A stretch of DNA of 64,000 nucleotides from Lama glama (Eukaryota): NCBI GenBank assembly GCA_028534125.1, contig CM052822.1:59458001-59522000 (forward strand). Direction: 5' to 3'. How positions within the stretch are numbered: the first letter of the stretch is position 1; the number at the start of each line of letters is the position of its first letter. The position numbers and the translations under genes are program-made. Under the pieces are notes generated by a model. The model made no database searches. It was given only the letters and a program-made list of their open reading frames with translations, and was not told the DNA's origin. Of the stretch, positions 32,402-63,970 are shown in pieces.

Positions 32402-34647
32402 ATGGCGGGGAGGGGGAAGNNNNNNNNNNNNNNNNNNNNNNNNNNNNNNNNNNNNNNNNNNNNNNNNNNNNNNNNNNNNNNNNNNNNNNNNNNNNNNNNN
32501 NNNNNNNNNNNNNNNNNNNNNNNNNNNNNNNNNNNNNNNNNNNNNNNNNNNNNNNNNNNNNNNNNNNNNNNNNNNGGCCTGAACGGGACCCTCCGCTGCC
32601 TAGTGGCAGCGCGGGAAGGCGGGGGCGGCACGAGGCTTCCAGACCTTAACCGAAGTATCAGACCCCGTCCTCCAGGCTCAGAGAAGTCGGTCCACCCGCC
32701 CTTCCGGAGCGAAGGCCTCCGTATGGGACCGGGGCTATGTCGGGTCCACAAGCTCCCCCCTCACATGACCGTGTGTCAGGAAAGAAGGGGAACAGAGCTC
32801 GTGACGGGCTGGCGCCGCGCTCGGCCCAACCTGCCCCGCCGGAGCTGGGCTTTTAGAGCACCTAGGCCCTGGAGGGGGCCAGACTCAGCTTCCCTGCAGG
32901 GGCCTCCCCAGTTCAGCCGTAGAGCAGGCTCGGGCACTGCAAGCACTCTTTTGCGAGTTGACCCCTAAAAGAACCACACACTCTGAACACCTGGGCAGTG
33001 AGTTCGGCTTTCTTTATTTTCATATCCCTTTGAGGCCCCAATCGTGAGGTAAGGTAGGGAGTGGGTATTCCCACTTACAGGTAGAAAACTAAAAAGTTCA
33101 CAGAGGTTAAGGTACCTACTAAAGTCATACAATGCTGAAGAGACTGAGCAGGGAAGGGATTTGAACCTGGTCCCCACTCTTTCTGCCTTCCTTAAGCCAG
33201 GTCTACACTCTGCTTGTGCCGCTGTCTTCTGTTTGCTTTGGAATTTCCCATTGCCCTTAGCACAGTGGACAGGTTATCAGGACTGTGTCCTACCTTCTGC
33301 TAAGACCTTGCACTTCAAATATGCATTTCCTGTCCTGGGTTAAGAGCAATAGTTTCAAAATGTAGGTGCAGGCATGTCCCTTAATCCAGGAGGTGTCCTG
33401 ATGACTAGAATTGAGGGTGCCAGTCCTCCCTTTTTTTCCCACACCCCTTCTCTAGGGCCCCTGTGCCAAGTCTCAGGAACAAACCGCTCTTACCTGTTTC
33501 TCCCTAAGCAGCCCAGTCCTGAGCTGCCGGCTGAAACTGGTTCCCGCTGCCTGGGGGATGATAGGCCCTTACCTGGGAGCTGATCTCTGCTGATCCCTAA
33601 GCAGTCTGGTAGAGTGACCCAAGTTGTCATGAGAGAAGGACAAATATTACTGCAAGAACTTTCCAAGTTTCCAATCAAAAGGGACCTCAGAAATCATTAA
33701 GTATAACCTTCCCTAGTGTTTGGCACAGAGTAGGTGCTCAGTAAATAGTTTTTAAGGAGTAAATAAATTAATGAATGGGTCACATGGAATGGATCACATG
33801 AAAGTAAGAGTCCAGCGCCAGGTTCTCTATGTGGAAAGTGTGATTTCCTTGGTCACTAATTTTCCTCTTCCTGTGTTGTGTTCTTGACTCAGGCCAAACT
33901 TCCCCTCTGATCTACCCCCTGCCCTTAGCAGCATAGACCTTGAGTGGTCTCAACAGTGCCCCCTGAAAAAATTTAATGTTTTCTTTTGAAAAGTTAATGT
34001 GTTCATGTGGTTTCTAAATTAATATTTAAAAGATACACACATTGAGAAGTCATACTCTCACCCCGACCTCTTCTACTTCATTACCTCCTTCCTCCACCCC
34101 GCAGATAACCACTTAGCTTCTTCCTTATCTTTCTGCAGATAAAAAGGTCAGACATATTTATTCTTATCCTCTCCTTTCTTACATGAAGGCAGCATATGGA
34201 ATACACCAGCATGCACCCTTATCTTCATTATCAGTTCAGCTGGGAGCCTTCCAAGCAGGGGAAGGTAGAAGCCGTGGCCCTTAGCTTTTGAGTGAAATTG
34301 ATTCTGAATAGAATGGAGCAAGTTTAAGATAGCAACCTTTTCCCTTGTCCATTGTGCTCTCTGGATCAAGCTTGTTCCCCTTTGCAGACCAGCCCACCAA
34401 CTGAGAGTGGACCGCCCTGGACTCCCTTCTCATCTCTCCCAACAGGCAGTTTCTAAACCGGGACGACATTGGCATCATCCTCATCAACCAGTACATCGCA
34501 GAGATGGTGCGGCATGCGCTCGATGCCCACCAGCGCTCCATTCCGGCCGTCCTGGAGATCCCATCCAAGGAGCACCCCTATGATGCTGCCAAGGACTCCA
34601 TCCTTCGCAGGGCCAGGGGCATGTTCACGGCTGAAGACCTCCGCTAG
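32402..34647 (+). CDS. ATP6V1F: V-type proton ATPase subunit F, 119 aa, 2 exons
   Basis: ATG at 32402 gives MAGRGK, then an N gap (32420-32575; exon 1 expected to end ~32559). Exon 2 at 34446-34647 encodes [66 protein letters not shown]. Confidence 0.96.
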
Positions 34648-35347: not shown

Positions 35348-37514
<2,167 letters not shown>

Positions 37515-37699
37515 CCCTAGGCCAGGTAGTGGGCTGAGGGGGGATAAAAAGAAATAACACACCTCTTGGTGGGGCAAGGCTGTCGTGTGTGTCTGTCTGG
37601 CTCTCCCAGGCGCTGAGGCTGCTTTCTGGGCCGTTCTGAAACTCTCTGACCTCTTGCTTTTTCCTTAACCCCCCATCTCTTAATCATCCCTTTGAGGAT

Positions 37700-40600
37700 T
37701 CAGCAGTGACTAGAGGAGTCTGGGAATGGTGAGCGATACTCTCCAGGCTCCTCAGCGCCAGGGGGCCACAGTAGCTGCTGGAAGCTCTGGGTGTTCCTGG
37801 GGAGAGAGTGGTCTGTCACCCCAGATGCCAGGGAAAGAGGACTGCCACCACCCCACAAATTTCCCCGCTCGCCCCCTCACCTGGCTCCGAGAGCCCGCAG
37901 CCGCCCGGTCCTCTCCCGGTGCGCCTGCTCCAGCTGCTCCCGCAGGGCGCGCCGCTGCCCGGCCGCGTCCTCCTGGGGCCGTACGGAGCGCTGAGCGTCC
38001 GCGCCTCCCAGCGCCCGGGTTCGATGAGGCCAGCAGGGGGCAGCACCCGGGAAGGCCCGCCCCTCCCGCTCTCCGCAGGTGTCATTGCAAGTGCGCGGCG
38101 CAAGCACATCCAAGGGCCCCGGGTCGCGCCCAGCTCGGCCGCCGCCTCCCGCCCGGGCAGGGTCGTTACGGCCCCACTGCCTTCTCCTGGGGGGGGTGGT
38201 CTTGCCTGTGGTGGGAGCTGAGCTGGGTTGGGTGGAGGTCCCAGGGGGTGCACCCGGCAGTGGCGGTTCCTGGCGATGCGGAGGCGTTCCAGGACCTGGG
38301 GGAGGCGGCTGTCAGCGGCCGCCCCGCCGCCCCTCGGTGTCCCGACAGCACGCCCGCCCGCCCGCCCGGCCCGGCCCGGCCGCGCACCCGGAGCCGCTGC
38401 TGCTCGCGGTCCTGCCGCCGGCGGCGCCTAGCCTCACGGTGCAGCTCCAGCAGCCGCTGAAGAGCCGTCTCCTGCTGCGCCGCGCTCACACCCGCCGACG
38501 ACCTCTTCCTGCCCGGGGGCTCGGGCCAAGCGGCCTTCGAGGCCTTGGGGGCTTCGGCGCCACCCCTCGACTCCCCGAGGGCGCCCGGGAGCCCCGTGGA
38601 GCCGCCCACCTCCTGCTCCGCGGGGCTGGGGCTTCCTCCCGGGCCCTGAAGCGCGTACGGATCGCGCACCAGGCCCGGGTGCCCCGAGGAAGCTGCAAGG
38701 TGCTCCAGCTGCCCGGAGCCCCCAGTGTGTCGGGCCGCTAGCATCACCACTCCTGGGCCTGGGAGTGGCGGCTGGGCTGGGGGCCTCGGGGTCGGAAGGG
38801 GAACCCACGTTCCTTCCCGGGCGGGCCCCTGCTCTCCCACGGCCGATGCCGACTCTCCTGTCCAGGCATCAGTCTTAACCTGCATCAGCTGGTTGGTCCT
38901 TCCCCGGGGGCCTGGGCTCTCCCGGCTTTCAGGCTGCGGCATCTGTTCTCCCAGGGACCTGCAGAAGTCCCCCGGAATTCCCAGGGAGCCGCCTTCCTCC
39001 GAGGGCAGTGTAGGCGCCTCTCCCTGAGCCACCTCCAGGGCTTGTGAGAGACAGCCTCTGCCGTCGGAAGACTGAAGGATCTTCACTTCCAGGCCCTGAG
39101 GAGAATCCTCACTCTGCTCCAAGAGGGCCTCCTTTCTCTGACACTTAGAGTGATTTCTGTCTTGACCTTGAGGAGCCTCTTTGTTCTCACCCTGGGGGGC
39201 CTCCCACCTTTGCCCTTCAGGGACCTCTTCTTCCCTCAGAGCCTGCATAGCCTCCACACTCTGACCCTGTTGTGTCTTCTCTCTCTTCCTCTGAGGAAAG
39301 TCTTTGTCCTTCCCCTGGGGGGCCTCCCCTCTCTGATCCTGAGGGGTCTCTTCTTTCTGCTCCTGAGGGTCCTCCTCTCTCTGACTCTGAATCATCTCAA
39401 TCCTTAGCAGCTTCTGAAGCTCTGCTCTCTCCTGGCCTGGGCTGCAGCCCAGCCCCTCCAGGGGATCTTGGGGTTCTGGCAGGCCCTGGGGCGGGAAGCT
39501 TGAGGGTCCTGGGGCTCCCTGAGCAAGCTTTTTCTCCTGTAGGCTCCTGGATGATGATCGACTGGGCCTCTGGGTTGTGGGCTCTGCTTGGCCCCTCTCA
39601 TCCCTCTGGGTCAGGTCCTAGGAAGGAAGAACACTTTGACCCAGGTTTTTGAGGCACCCCCTGTGCTAGGGCCATGTCCCGCATGGAACCCTGGAGACCC
39701 CAGTGGGCCTGTAAGGGCCCTTACCTTTTTTCCTGAATTCATTAAATCCATGTTATATAATAGAAAAGGTGCTTCACTGATAGTCCCTTCTTCCACCTGG
39801 CAGTGAGTGGGCTTCTCACCCCAGCAGCCTCCTCCCAGACAAACCCCTGCTATCCCCAATCTGAGAGGGGTCTTGCCCAGGACCCTTCAACCCTTTCACC
39901 TTGAACTCTGAGCTTCCTGGTTCCCCAAAACTGCCGGTGGTGGTGGGGTTCAGCTCTTGTAAGCAACCTGCGGGACAAAGACTGATGTTGGGAGCCCTCT
40001 GCTCCTGTCCCAGCACCCCCCCACACACACATTCCACCAGAACCAGAACCAAGAAACCTAGGGAGTCCCCAGCATGGAAGCAGGGAGGTACCCTGAGGAC
40101 TGGTATTGGAATTTCAAGGCTGTCACAGTTCATCACTCCCCTTTTATTTACACAGTCTGCTATGTGCCTGTTTGTCAGGTTTGCCTGCCAACAGCTGACC
40201 CCATCTTCCTCATCCTCCCAGCCAAGGACCACCTCAGAGGAACCTGCACACCCTCTTCCTCAGAACCACCAGGGTAGGCCTAGGAGCAGGAAGGGACTGC
40301 TTTTACCTGGCTTGTCAGTCCTTCATAAGGACTACCCCCACTTTATCCCTGTGTGCCTACCCAGCCCCACCATATGGACCTTAGTTTCTTACTATTTAGG
40401 ATAATCCTCCTTAGCTCTTTCTTGGTTTCTGACAGAAAAATCAAGTGAAATTCAAGAAGTGGAATTTTAGGCCAGAGGCTAACCTAAAAACTGCAAGTCT
40501 TCCTAATGAACAAAAGGAATCTAAAAAAAGATGAAATGTCGCTGCTCCTTTGCAGCTGTGGAGGAAGGAGCATTGTTTTGCATCCATAAAACTAGTTAAA

Positions 40601-43403
40601 AGAACTTGATTTTGTAAGGTCTTAAATTGAGAACTCTCACAAGAAATGCCATCTTTATGCAATATGGATGTGTGAATATTCATAACAGTAACCAAATGGG
40701 AATGCTCTCTGTGAAAACAAATCTGTCTTTTGAAGAGTTTCAAACAAAAGAATCTAATAAGACTCCCAAGCCTTTAGAAATTATTGCTATGAACTGTGAA
40801 AATAACCTCCAACCCCTGTCCCCTTGTCATTCTGATCTGTTGTCTTACTAGGTCATTTATTTCTCTGGTTGTAGTGTTGTAATTGATGTCTCCCACAATG
40901 TCTTCCCAGGTAATAATATACTTGTAAAAATCTCTCTGTCGGTCAGAAATAATCATTGGCACTTTCCTCCTCTCTCCCGGGCATGATGGCACAATTGAAG
41001 GCTTATGACTTTGCCAGGCCTATTATTTAACAAATCACTTGAGAGCCTGTTTCATTTAAACTAACAGGCCCAGGGCTCACAGCATCCATCCTACTGAGTT
41101 CTGATCCCTGTTTATTGTCATACTCTCTCACTAGGCTATGATTTCCTTAGAGATGAGGACAAGTGATGAGCCAAGTCTCTCTTGTGCTGTTTCTCCCCAG
41201 TGCCTGGCATGCGGGTGGCAACTAGGCAGCTTGGAGCGGCCATTCAAGTCCCTCCTCCCTGGGCAGCCGTGGACAGTGATTCCCAGCTCTCTCCCCTCTG
41301 TACCCCAGCTTAGCTTCAGAATCCTCTTGGACACAGTGCCTGAGACAGCTGGTACTAATCAGGTGGAATTGGCATATAAAAGAAAATCTACCTGTTGTCC
41401 CTGGGTGCCCCTGGCACCCCCCCAAAAAGTACGAGGCAAGGAATAGGTGAGGATGGACTGAAATCCCAGGACTTGGGGTGAGGGCTTCCCCAATCCTCCC
41501 AACCTAGGCTGGCCACTCCAGCCCAGGGACGCCTGTTCTCCTGGCTGCTAACCCCTCCTGTCAACGTACCAGGCGTGGACTCTGCAGGCATGCCAGGGCT
41601 CTCCCACCTTGGGTCTGCATTACTCCTGGCTTCACTTAGATCCCGGGCTGATGATGGGTCCACCGACTGCCCCCTGCAGGAATGCAAAGACTGCCTCAGA
41701 TGCACCTTTTGCATCTGGGCTCTGGAGAGACAGGGGCACCCTGCCTCCCAGACTCCCTGCCCCCAGTAGGCTGCTAAGCCGTCCCACTCCAACACCCAAG
41801 CTCAGTCCAGGGCATCTTTCCCCAACTCTGTACCCATCACTGGGTCCCAGGAGCTGGAACTCGAGGTTACCCTTTCCAGGGGCTGTGGGCAACCATATTT
41901 ATGGATACAATTGAGTGAGAGCCCCAGGAGGAGCTGGGGGAATGAGGAGGGGTCGATGGGCAGGGGTATGGAGAGAGACAGAACGAAGGATCCAGTGCTT
42001 GGTTGCTTAGTGTGGCAACATGGAGTGGATGAAATTCCCTGGGAGAAAGGCTCACCCCTCCAGGAGCTGATGGGTCTGGTTCAGGGAGTCCTCAGCAGGA
42101 GGCGATGAGCACAGCCTGGAACTCTGGAAGGGTTGGGGGCTGCCTAGTCCATAGGGCATCAACCTCCAGTGTAGTGGGCGACCTCCAAGCCCCCAGTGAT
42201 CCCTCCTCCTGGTATCCGTGTCCTTGTGTGACCACCCTCCTCTTCCCCTCCAAGTGAAGGAGTTTGGAAATGGATCCCTCCTGCCCACTCTAGCCTTCAG
42301 TTGAGACTGTAGTCCTGGCCAAAAGTGTTGGCTGGACACTTCTTCAGTGGTAATCGCTAACACCCCCTCCTGCCACAGCTACTAACCTGCCCAAAAGGCC
42401 TCGGGCAGTTGACGGCTGAGCTGGGACTGGGAGGCACATCCTAGTTCCCAGTCGCCACAGCTCCCTCCTTCCTGGAGGGAGGGACCAGGCACTGGGGCTG
42501 CTCAGGGTCTCATCTCAGAGGCACCCTGGGAATCAGTGCCTCCACCCTCTGGGCCCCACCAGGCCTGCTTTCCTCCCGCACTGCAGCCATGTCCAAAGGC
42601 TTCTAGGTGTCAACACGCAGTTGATTTGACCAAGATAGTTCACTATGGAATGGTAACGAGCCGGGACAGTCCTGGGTACCAGATACAGTCCCCCCTGCAG
42701 CCCCCTGAGAAAGAGCTATTATCTTCCCCATTTCGTAGCTGAGGAAACAGGCTCACAATCACAAGGAGCGTCAGCAGAGATTTGAACCCAGATCCCTCTA
42801 TCTCTAAGCCCTTCTACTTCTCAACCACTTTAAGTGTCCCAAAGTCCCACTGACTGCCCCCCTGCCTTCAGCTCACCCAACTTGTCCGCTGCTCAGAGCC
42901 CCCATCCATCCTACCATGGGGCATGCTGCCCTGGCTCCATGCACACTGGGCCTGGCCTCTCAGACCACAAAGCTGGGCCCGGTGGGGCCAGAAGAGGCCC
43001 AGCCCTGCCCCGGTCAGCAGCTCCAAGTCCCACAGGAGCTGCAGGAAGACAGGGTGCCAGAATGTGAAGGGGCACCCACCCTGCCCTCTGCCACATCCCC
43101 TGGCCGGCTGGACCTTACCTGCTCCTGGGCCCGCCGGCTCCGCTCCATCTGCAGTAGCACCGTGGGCAGTTCCAGGCCTGAGGGACAGGCCTGGCCCTCT
43201 TGTACCTGGGGAGGCAAAGTGGAATCAGGCCCCACGGAGAGCCCACCCCCTTGAAAACAGTGCCCCTCCGCCCTCACCTGCTGCAGGGCAGCCCAGAGCT
43301 GGCCCAAGCCTGCAGGGCAGTGGAAGATGCGCTGGTACAGGGCCAAGGCCTGCTTGAGGCTACAAGGGAGCCCTCGGCCCCCAGGAGTGGCTGTCTGCTC
43401 CAT
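37700..43403 (-). CDS. Uncharacterised multi-exon gene, ~661 aa (Q/E/P-rich repeat, C-terminal Arg/Glu-rich helical region)
   Basis: Nine exons with compatible phases: 43403-43278, 43205-43119, 43038-42915, 39967-39900, 39796-39725, 39617-38388, 38295-38206 (GC donor), 37972-37881, 37796-37700 (TGA). 1986 nt open end to end. Exons 1-3 and 6-9 are well supported; exons 4-5 are less certain. Confidence 0.72.
37860..38860. other. Intragenic CpG island over the 3' coding exons of the uncharacterised gene
   Basis: Very high CpG density with no visible gene start here. Confidence 0.75.
39093..39383 (-). repeat. Coding 24-nt (8-aa) tandem repeat, ~12 units
   Basis: QREEDPQE/QKEETPQD/QRGEAPQG/KDKDFPQR/KREKTQQG/QSVEAMQA/LREEEVPEG/QRWEAPQG/ENKEAPQG/QDRNHSKC/QRKEALLE/QSEDSPQG. 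Confidence 0.8.
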
Positions 43404-43709
43404 GGGGTAGGGGGCCAGTGAAGATGATCCTGCCTTCCTCTCCCTCTGCTGCTCCTCGAGAGAGGAGGAGGACCAGGAGCTGGGGACAGGAGCAAGGAGG
43501 AGACAAAGGCTCCTGAGCTAAATAATGCAGCTCCCTGACATCTGAGCCAGGGCCTGGGCCTCAGCCAAGTCTCATAGAGATGCTGACCTGACTCTGATGC
43601 GGGTTTCTTGGCCATCTGGGTGGCAGTGTGGGGTAAGGAGTAAGATCCTGATAAAGAGGTGTGTGCAGGTGCTCATTTGCAGTCCGGAACGAGCATCAGT
43701 TTTACATAG

Positions 43710-45200: not shown

Positions 45201-63970
<18,770 letters not shown>

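What the first reader, a model, noticed from the sequence alone, without database searches (positions are those of the whole stretch)
37700..43403. Unrecognised 9-exon protein-coding gene between KCP and SPMIP1 (minus strand, ~661 aa)
Seen: ORF fragments that look unrelated in the six-frame track join at good splice sites with matching phases (0,0,1,0,0,0,0,2) into one open 1986-nt CDS. It reads MEQTATPGGRGLPCSLKQALALYQRIFHCPAGLGQLWAALQQ | VQEGQACPSGLELPTVLLQMERSRRAQEQ | LLWDLELLTGAGLGLFWPHRAQLCGLRGQAQCAWSQGSMPHG | CLQELNPTTTGSFGEPGSSEFK | VEEGTISEAPFLLYNMDLMNSGKK | DLTQRDE...(410-codon exon)...LQRLLELHREARRRRRQDREQQRLR | VLERLRIARNRHCRVHPLGPPPNPAQLPPQ | EDAAGQRRALREQLEQAHRERTGRLRALGAR | NTQSFQQLLWPPGAEEPGEYRSPFPDSSSHC*. 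The 1230-nt exon starts at a pyrimidine-rich TAG acceptor, which is also the stop that bounds the ORF. Inference: helical N- and C-terminal modules joined by a disordered, repetitive linker. I know of no named gene here; it may exist only as an uncharacterised LOC model. Its position beside a sperm axonemal gene hints at testis expression, but that is speculation.
Basis: partly seen in the sequence, partly recalled or inferred. Interest (0 to 1): 0.88.

Follow-up and report, generated by a model that had tools for sequence, protein, structure and literature searches.

The report
Unnamed conserved vertebrate gene beside KCP
The stretch holds a real protein-coding gene that automatic pipelines already predict in alpaca, pig and many other mammals as an "uncharacterised protein"; it has relatives down to fish, but no name, no known domain and no known function.

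Summary
The gene is real, but the exon model needs correcting and it is not entirely unrecognised.

The nine minus-strand pieces join into an open 1986-nt, 661-codon frame, with AG acceptors, seven GT donors and one GC donor.

**Support from orthologues.**
- Eight of the nine exons match orthologue models.
- Exon 5 (39796-39725) occurs in no orthologue.
- The conserved isoform adds a 38-nt extension of exon 3 and two missed exons (42123-42056 and 41673-41570). This gives a 10-exon, 2124-nt, 707-aa model.
- That model is 99% identical, without gaps, over 645 aa to the RefSeq "uncharacterized protein" of Vicugna pacos, so the window is camelid.
- A pig contig carries exons 3b to 9 as one continuous ORF, which I take to be a spliced transcript.

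**Architecture.** A helical N-module and a helix-linker-helix C-module flank a fast-evolving disordered middle. Both modules recur in a marsupial and in teleost proteins. The C-module also recurs in a lizard and in amphibians. Neither has a Pfam or PDB relative.

**Names.** No hominoid, Mus or Rattus protein appeared in the searches.

**Function.** Unknown. My best guess is a disordered scaffold whose terminal modules bind partners.

The parts
43278..43403 (-). Coding exon 1, with ATG at 43403-43401; first part of the N-module
   Evidence: The MEQ(A/T)ATPGG...LPCS..KQALALYQ start is shared by the fox, sea lion, reindeer, armadillo and alpaca models.
43119..43205 (-). Coding exon 2 (N-module)
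   Evidence: AG acceptor and GT donor. 83-93% aa identity to Laurasiatherian orthologues.
42877..43038 (-). Coding exon 3, long form with donor TTGG|gtgagc at 42877.
   Evidence: tblastn of orthologues runs on to about 42871-42880. Colinear with alpaca P0083. The short donor is mirrored only in the Phyllostomus hastatus model P0017.
42056..42123 (-).
   Evidence: Acceptor cttccag|AG and donor GAGGG|gtgagc. 70-74% identity to whale and reindeer. Present in alpaca P0083 and the pig contig ORF P0011.
41570..41673 (-).
   Evidence: Acceptor tcctgcag|G and donor CCTG|gtacgt. 63-78% identity to orthologues. The phases fit.
39900..39967 (-). Coding exon 4
   Evidence: CLQELNPTT..SFGEPGSSEFK is conserved.
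39725..39796 (-).
   Evidence: Absent from every orthologue model aligned, from alpaca P0083 and from the pig contig ORF P0011, all of which join ...SEFK directly to DL(A/T)QR....
38388..39617 (-). Coding exon 6 (1230 nt, 410 codons): the disordered middle plus the start of the C-module helix 1
   Evidence: 80 homologues, with E down to 2e-147. The frame is kept across 12 species despite 43 distinct gap blocks. GC1/2/3 = 0.73/0.53/0.71.
38206..38295 (-). Coding exon 7 (C-module helix 1), followed by a GC-AG intron
   Evidence: Donor CAG|gcaaga. The junction ...LPPQ|EDAAG... is the same in the fox, reindeer, armadillo and sea lion models and in the pig contig ORF.
37881..37972 (-). Coding exon 8 (C-module helix 2).
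   Evidence: Masked in all later scripts and sent to no search tool.
37700..37796 (-). Coding exon 9, with stop TGA at 37702-37700. Carries the invariant RNTxxFxxLLxP tail.
   Evidence: One substitution relative to alpaca P0083.
37277..37282 (-). AATAAA polyadenylation signal, about 420 nt after the stop
37800..38800 (.). CpG island over the 3' coding exons. The 5' end (43400-43600) is CpG-poor.
   Evidence: GC 0.72-0.78, CpG observed/expected 0.61-0.90.

Best explanation
This is the camelid orthologue of an unnamed vertebrate protein-coding gene. It lies tail-to-head downstream of KCP and convergent with SPMIP1.

**Model.** The conserved product is a 707-aa protein from 10 coding exons: e1, e2, long e3, 3b, 3c, e4, e6, e7, e8 and e9.

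**Architecture.** A helical N-module of about 110 aa and a C-module of about 105 aa flank a long, fast-evolving, intrinsically disordered middle. The C-module is a basic helix, a linker and a second helix, ending in an invariant RNTxxFxxLLxP motif.

**Shown here.**
- The frame and the splice sites.
- Orthology to existing models.
- Conservation of both modules.
- A contiguous contig ORF across the exon junctions in pig.

**Inferred.**
- The protein acts as a disordered scaffold or adaptor whose two terminal modules dock partners. The arginine-rich helix 1 could instead bind microtubules or nucleic acid.
- Intron 7 (GC-AG) must be spliced out in this genome to keep the conserved second helix.
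For: **Frame and splice sites.**
- the 2124-nt long model is open.

**Orthology.**
- 99.07% gap-free identity over aa 1-645 to RefSeq Vicugna pacos P0083.
- 80 mammalian homologues of exon 6.

**Transcript evidence in pig.**
- pig contig ORF P0011 is 544 aa on a 3112-nt contig.
- It spans exons 3b to 9 across six junctions without exon 5.
- It clusters with Sus scrofa XP_020934613-15.

**Coding constraint.**
- e2, the e6 tail, e7 and e8 are mostly 75-100% identical across Laurasiatherian orders where the compared isoform carries them. The middle is 40-70% identical.
- 43 distinct in-frame gap blocks in exon 6 among 12 species.

**Range and architecture.**
- the C-module sits at the C-terminus of uncharacterised proteins of a marsupial, a lizard, frogs, a newt and teleosts (profile E from 1e-15 to 1e-7).
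- the N-module sits at the N-terminus of the bilby protein (4e-32) and of teleost proteins (1.6e-13 to 1e-5).
- AF2 gives disorder in the middle and two long helices with pLDDT above 90 in the C-module.

**Intron 7.**
- read-through of the 233-nt intron 7 in this genome shifts the frame and hits a stop.
Against: - There is no read-level RNA evidence from this species. Whether the pig Logan contigs come from RNA is inferred from their spliced ORF, not documented.
- Orthologue proteins are mostly Gnomon predictions, which select for open frames.
- The alpaca model itself retains intron 7.
- No dN/dS could be computed because no orthologous DNA was available.
- Function rests on architecture only. 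There is no Pfam, PDB or Foldseek relative.
- The homodimer test gave no verdict.
- The ESM Atlas hits (CEP126, KIAA2012, CEP295NL) score 0.75-0.78, which is chance level.
Confidence: 0.85

Rival explanations
1. The reader's exact 9-exon, 661-aa model is the main product. That model includes exon 5 and joins the short exon 3 directly to exon 4.
For: It is open, with plausible splice sites. The short-e3 to e4 junction is mirrored in the Phyllostomus hastatus model P0017. Exon skipping is common among the predicted isoforms.
Against: Exon 5 is in no orthologue, not in the 99%-identical alpaca model and not in the pig contig ORF. Exons 3b and 3c are conserved, open and in phase in this window.
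Confidence: 0.07
2. The exons are a 3' extension or read-through of KCP and not an independent gene.
For: The gene is on the same strand as KCP. The last KCP exon mapped here ends at 45592, about 2.2 kb upstream of the ATG. Three annotation sets either fuse this gene with KCP or give it KCP's name: Pteropus alecto P0088, Scotinomys teguina P0087 and Apodemus speciosus P0251.
Against: About 20 models start at the same conserved MEQAATPGG methionine without any KCP domains. Fish and marsupial homologues carry the N-module at their own N-terminus. The Pteropus alecto fusion (P0088) joins KCP into the middle of exon 1, which looks like an ab initio artefact.
Confidence: 0.05
3. It is a non-coding transcript, or no gene at all, and the ORF is a by-product of GC-rich DNA.
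For: The region is 65% GC. 2 of 300 shuffles give an open run of at least 410 codons. No gene is listed here in an Ensembl-based sheep gene list (PMC12924876). No hominoid or Mus/Rattus protein was seen.
Against: Protein-level conservation of both terminal modules from fish to mammals. All indels in exon 6 are in frame across 12 species. The GC2-low codon pattern is typical of coding sequence.
Confidence: 0.03

Closest known systems
RefSeq 'uncharacterized protein' of Vicugna pacos (P0083, 784 aa; the UniRef cluster is labelled 'Coiled-coil domain-containing protein 187')
   Same: 99.07% identical and gap-free over aa 1-645. It has the same exons e1, e2, long e3, 3b, 3c, e4, e6 and e7, and the same e8-e9 tail with one substitution.
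   Different: The alpaca model reads through intron 7, adding 77 aa in frame there. In this window the intron is 233 nt, so read-through breaks the frame and splicing at the GC donor is needed.
Mammalian Gnomon LOC models with junk names: pig XP_020934613-15 'collagen alpha-1(I) chain-like', sea lion LOC114210593, Moschus LOC129551976, macaque 'GPRIN1-like', bats 'RP1L1'
   Same: Same N-module, disordered middle and C-module, and the same exon junctions.
   Different: 55-72% identity in the middle. Their names reflect composition only. None has a Pfam domain.
Uncharacterised 800-2800-aa proteins of teleosts (Solea LOC122775533, Betta LOC114856729), Podarcis LOC128422590, frogs, a newt and bilby LOC141492962
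   Same: The C-module sits at the C-terminus, with the same invariant L/R/N/F/LL/P positions. In bilby and the teleosts the N-module also sits at the N-terminus.
   Different: They have much longer and unrelated middles. Synteny with KCP could not be checked, so orthology as opposed to paralogy is inferred from architecture alone.
Disordered centrosome and cilium proteins (CEP126/KIAA1377, KIAA2012, CEP295NL)
   Same: Similar language-model features: long disordered regions with basic helices.
   Different: Scores of 0.75-0.78 are at chance level. There is no sequence or Pfam match. This is a lead only.

Membership tests
Unnamed vertebrate LOC family (alpaca P0083, pig XP_020934613, etc.) | Colinear high identity to an existing member | tested here: met
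   99.07% over 645 aa without gaps to P0083. 60-72% identity to other orders.
Unnamed vertebrate LOC family | N-module at the N-terminus (MEQ..LPCS..QALALYQ..F.CP ... LELP.VLL.ME.SRRAQEQLLWDLELLTGAGLGLFWP) | tested here: met
   Window exons 1-3 align column for column. An HMM of the module finds it in 90+ fetched proteins, including bilby and fish.
Unnamed vertebrate LOC family | C-module at the C-terminus (helix, linker, helix, RNTxxFxxLLxP) | tested here: met
   The e6 tail, e7 and e9 align.
Unnamed vertebrate LOC family | Position between KCP and SPMIP1/ATP6V1F | tested here: inconclusive
   True in this window.
Collagen (the source name 'collagen alpha-1(I) chain-like') | Gly-X-Y triple-helix repeats (Pfam Collagen) | tested here: not met
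   No Pfam family on any exon at E<=1. No precomputed Pfam domain for any of the 80 homologues.
CCDC187 / MAP10 (a UniRef label on the alpaca cluster) | The family's Pfam domain. From my own knowledge this is HPHLAWLY. | tested here: not met
   No Pfam hit on the window exons. P0083 has no precomputed Pfam domain.
KCP (kielin/chordin-like protein) C-terminal exons | VWC/VWD/C8 domains, or obligatory continuity with the KCP ORF | tested here: not met
   No Pfam domain. The gene has its own conserved start methionine. Most models are separate from KCP.

The most novel reading that the evidence does not exclude
The gene belongs to an ancient, fish-to-mammal family defined by two unclassified terminal modules. 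The family has escaped naming because no protein-coding orthologue is annotated in hominoids, mouse or rat. It may have decayed there, since several cercopithecid models already lack the N-module. Its C-module (helix-linker-helix plus RNTxxFxxLLxP) would be a new protein domain family with a conserved, still unknown binding partner.
Probability: 0.5. Interest if true: 0.6.

Novelty: new member of a known kind. Interest (0 to 1): 0.42.

Why it matters
- **Annotation.** The locus needs a corrected 10-exon model with a GC-AG intron. The junk names that pipelines give its orthologues (collagen-like, glutenin-like, RP1L1) should not be propagated.
- **Biology.** A gene whose two end modules have been kept since the fish-mammal split, yet which has no name, no domain entry and no visible human or mouse protein, is a candidate "dark" vertebrate gene. 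Defining its C-module as a domain would be cheap. Testing its expression, localisation and partners would be the next step.
- **Regulation.** Its convergent overlap with the sperm-axoneme gene SPMIP1 may matter for how both genes are regulated.

Tried and rejected
**RNA reads.**
No junction, strand or level data were obtained.
- Those places were sent to no search tool afterwards and were masked in later scripts.

**Orthologous DNA.**
- The search for related loci in metagenome contigs failed first for lack of a conserved stretch. With a closer alignment it found no relative.

**Known families and folds.**
- Pfam on all exons, on fish homologues and on C-module proteins found nothing meaningful.
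- A PDB profile search found 0 hits at E<=1.
- Foldseek against the PDB with the C-module model found 0 hits.
- The ESM Atlas was searched twice, giving only scores of 0.75-0.78.

**Complex prediction.** Complex prediction with two copies of the C-module gave no verdict, with score 0.00. This is not evidence either way.

**Literature.** Searches on orthologue accession and LOC numbers, and on KCP/ATP6V1F/testis, found nothing.

**Alternative donor.** I considered a GT donor 28 nt downstream of the GC donor of intron 7. I rejected it because 28 nt is out of frame, and the pig contig ORF and most models join exactly at ...PPQ|EDAAG.

**Joined model.**
- The joined spliced protein has no reference, so it was sent to no database, fold or atlas tool.
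- It was assembled only inside sandbox scripts, to check the frame and to align it with proteins already fetched.
- Database searches used exon 6 by reference and orthologue ids.

**Human sequence.** No contig that I took for human was fetched or compared. The unnamed Logan-only cluster P0015 was not pursued.


Full report
**Observation.**
- Every acceptor is AG. Seven donors are GT. Intron 7 has a GC donor in a good GC-AG context (CAG|gcaaga).
- The 1230-nt exon starts right after a TAG that also bounds the ORF.
- The open frame is not strong evidence on its own. The region is 65% GC, and 2 of 300 dinucleotide-preserving shuffles give an open run of 410 codons or more.
- The codon-position pattern GC1/2/3 = 0.73/0.53/0.71 is what coding sequence would give.

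**What the orthologues say about the model.**
- Exon 6, searched by reference, finds 80 mammalian proteins with E down to 2e-147. All are "uncharacterized LOC" or carry composition-driven names such as collagen-like, glutenin-like or RP1L1.
- Aligning full-length models with each window exon shows that exons 1, 2, 3, 4, 6, 7, 8 and 9 are matched.
- Several orthologues carry extra sequence between exons 3 and 4. tblastn maps it in the window to three features:
  - a run-on of exon 3 to a second donor at 42877;
  - exon 3b at 42123-42056;
  - exon 3c at 41673-41570.
- All three have proper splice sites and fitting phases. The resulting 10-exon model is 2124 nt and 707 aa, and it is open.
One bat model, P0017, has it.

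**Identity.**
- The long model is 99.07% identical, without a gap, over residues 1-645 to the RefSeq "uncharacterized protein" of Vicugna pacos (P0083, 784 aa). There are six substitutions in that stretch and one more in the tail. The window is therefore from a camelid very close to alpaca.
- The alpaca model reads through intron 7, which adds 77 aa and stays in frame there. In this window the intron is 233 nt, so read-through shifts the frame and meets a stop. Only splicing at the GC donor keeps the conserved C-terminal helix.
- The junction ...LPPQ|EDAAG... is the one found in the fox, reindeer, armadillo and sea lion models.
- It is also found in a pig contig ORF, P0011. That ORF is 544 aa, sits as one continuous ORF on a 3112-nt Logan contig, and is in the same 90% cluster as Sus scrofa XP_020934613-15.
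- P0011 crosses six exon junctions, from 3b to 9, and lacks exon 5. I take it as a spliced transcript. That the contig comes from RNA is an inference.

**Coding constraint.**
No dN/dS is given.
- Protein-level evidence is still strong:
  - Exon 2, the tail of exon 6, and exons 7 and 8 are mostly 75-100% identical across Laurasiatherian orders, where the compared isoform carries them. The middle of exon 6 is 40-70% identical.
  - Across 12 species the exon-6 equivalent varies from 343 to 410 residues, with 43 distinct gap blocks. All are in frame.
- One caveat is that most of these proteins are gene predictions, which favour open frames.

**Range and architecture.**
- A profile of 17 orthologues, searched against 1.84 billion representatives, gives only 160 hits.
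- Besides mammals, the C-terminal roughly 115 profile positions match the extreme C-terminus of 800-2800-aa uncharacterised proteins. These come from:
  - teleosts (Dallia, Siganus, Solea, Betta, Trachinotus, Thalassophryne);
  - a lizard (Podarcis);
  - frogs and a newt;
  - a marsupial (bilby).
- The alignment shows invariant L, R, N, F, LL and P positions and a terminal RNTxxFxxLLxP motif.
- An HMM of the N-module finds it at the N-terminus of the bilby protein (4e-32) and of teleost proteins (1.6e-13 to 1e-5).
- The architecture of N-module, long variable middle and C-module therefore predates the fish-mammal split.
- AF2 on the fox orthologue gives a mean pLDDT of 42.6. It shows low-confidence N-terminal helices, a disordered middle and confident C-terminal helices.
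- On the C-module alone, AF2 gives two long helices with pLDDT above 90 joined by a floppy linker.
- Neither module has a Pfam, PDB-sequence or Foldseek relative.

**Function.**
- Nothing tested here assigns a function.
- My best guess is a disordered scaffold or adaptor whose conserved ends dock partners.
- Helix 1 of the C-module is arginine-rich and could instead bind microtubules or nucleic acid. The invariant tail looks like a short binding motif.
- The homodimer prediction gave no verdict. The Atlas look-alikes (CEP126, KIAA2012, CEP295NL) score at chance level.

**Expression hints.**
- Four RNA-seq runs labelled as reproductive-system samples hold 16-20% of the stretch's words, and further runs hold 8-14%.
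- Without laid reads, these words cannot be assigned to this gene as opposed to SPMIP1.
- The 5' end is CpG-poor, as in many tissue-restricted genes. A CpG island covers the 3' exons.

**Context.**
- KCP exons run on the same strand from about 62000 down to 45592.
- Three non-RefSeq annotation sets either fuse this gene with KCP or give it KCP's name. I read these as artefacts, because about 20 models and the distant homologues start at the N-module itself.
- On the plus strand lie the last coding exon of ATP6V1F (34405-34644) and the first coding exon of SPMIP1 (35456-35953; Pfam PF22589, E 1.5e-28).
- The new gene has an AATAAA at 37282-37277. No plus-strand AATAAA or ATTAAA occurs between 35900 and 37760. 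This fits the convergent overlap noted by the scan in s1-856554, though I did not map SPMIP1's 3' exons.

**Rules and gaps.**
I sent those places to no search tool afterwards and masked them in scripts.
- The joined spliced protein has no reference, so it was given to no database, fold or atlas tool. It was built only in sandbox scripts. Searches used exon 6 by reference and orthologue ids, and the joined search step was left out.
- No contig that I took for human was fetched or compared.

**Novelty.**
- The gene's existence is not new. RefSeq predicts it in alpaca, pig, carnivores, bats, ruminants, whales, Old World monkeys, several rodents, armadillo and bilby.
- An Ensembl-based sheep gene list shows nothing between ATP6V1FNB and KCP (PMC12924876).
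- No source gives the gene a meaningful name, and no paper was found.
- No hominoid, Mus or Rattus protein turned up.
- It is an ordinary but uncharacterised gene whose family, two-module architecture and age are worth recording.

Noticed in passing
window 37800-38800: A CpG island (GC 0.72-0.78, observed/expected 0.61-0.90) covers the 3' end of exon 6, exon 7, intron 7 and exon 8. The gene's 5' end (43400-43600) is CpG-poor. This could be an orphan or alternative promoter on either strand.
   Followed up: partly
window 35456-35953 (+) and 35900-37760: The first coding exon of SPMIP1 matches Pfam PF22589 at positions 4-98 of 122. No plus-strand AATAAA or ATTAAA follows before 37760, so SPMIP1 transcripts probably run into the 3' part of the new gene (convergent overlap). 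SPMIP1's downstream exon was not located.
   Followed up: partly
window 37973-38205 (intron 7): The alpaca RefSeq protein reads through this intron in frame, adding 77 aa. Here the intron is 233 nt and read-through breaks the frame. The two genomes therefore differ by small indels, one of them near the poly-C run just after the GC donor.
   Followed up: partly
window 45592-62000 (-): KCP exons lie on the same strand immediately upstream. Annotation sets of Pteropus alecto (P0088) and Scotinomys teguina (P0087) fuse KCP with this gene. Apodemus speciosus P0251 carries the KCP name but no KCP exon match here.
   Followed up: partly
window 39314-39384: A 24-nt x3 tandem repeat (76% matches) lies inside exon 6 and encodes three 8-residue E/Q/P-rich units. 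It is the only clear repeat in the 'repetitive linker'.
   Followed up: no
window 34405-34644 (+): A C-terminal coding exon of ATP6V1F (...[61 protein letters not shown]), recognised by eye from my own knowledge of the protein.
   Followed up: no
orthologue proteins P0030, P0033, P0050 (cercopithecids): Several Old World monkey models start downstream of the N-module, while Rhinopithecus P0266 keeps part of it. No hominoid protein was seen. This may be lineage-specific decay. It was not examined further because of the scan's rules on human sequence.
   Followed up: no
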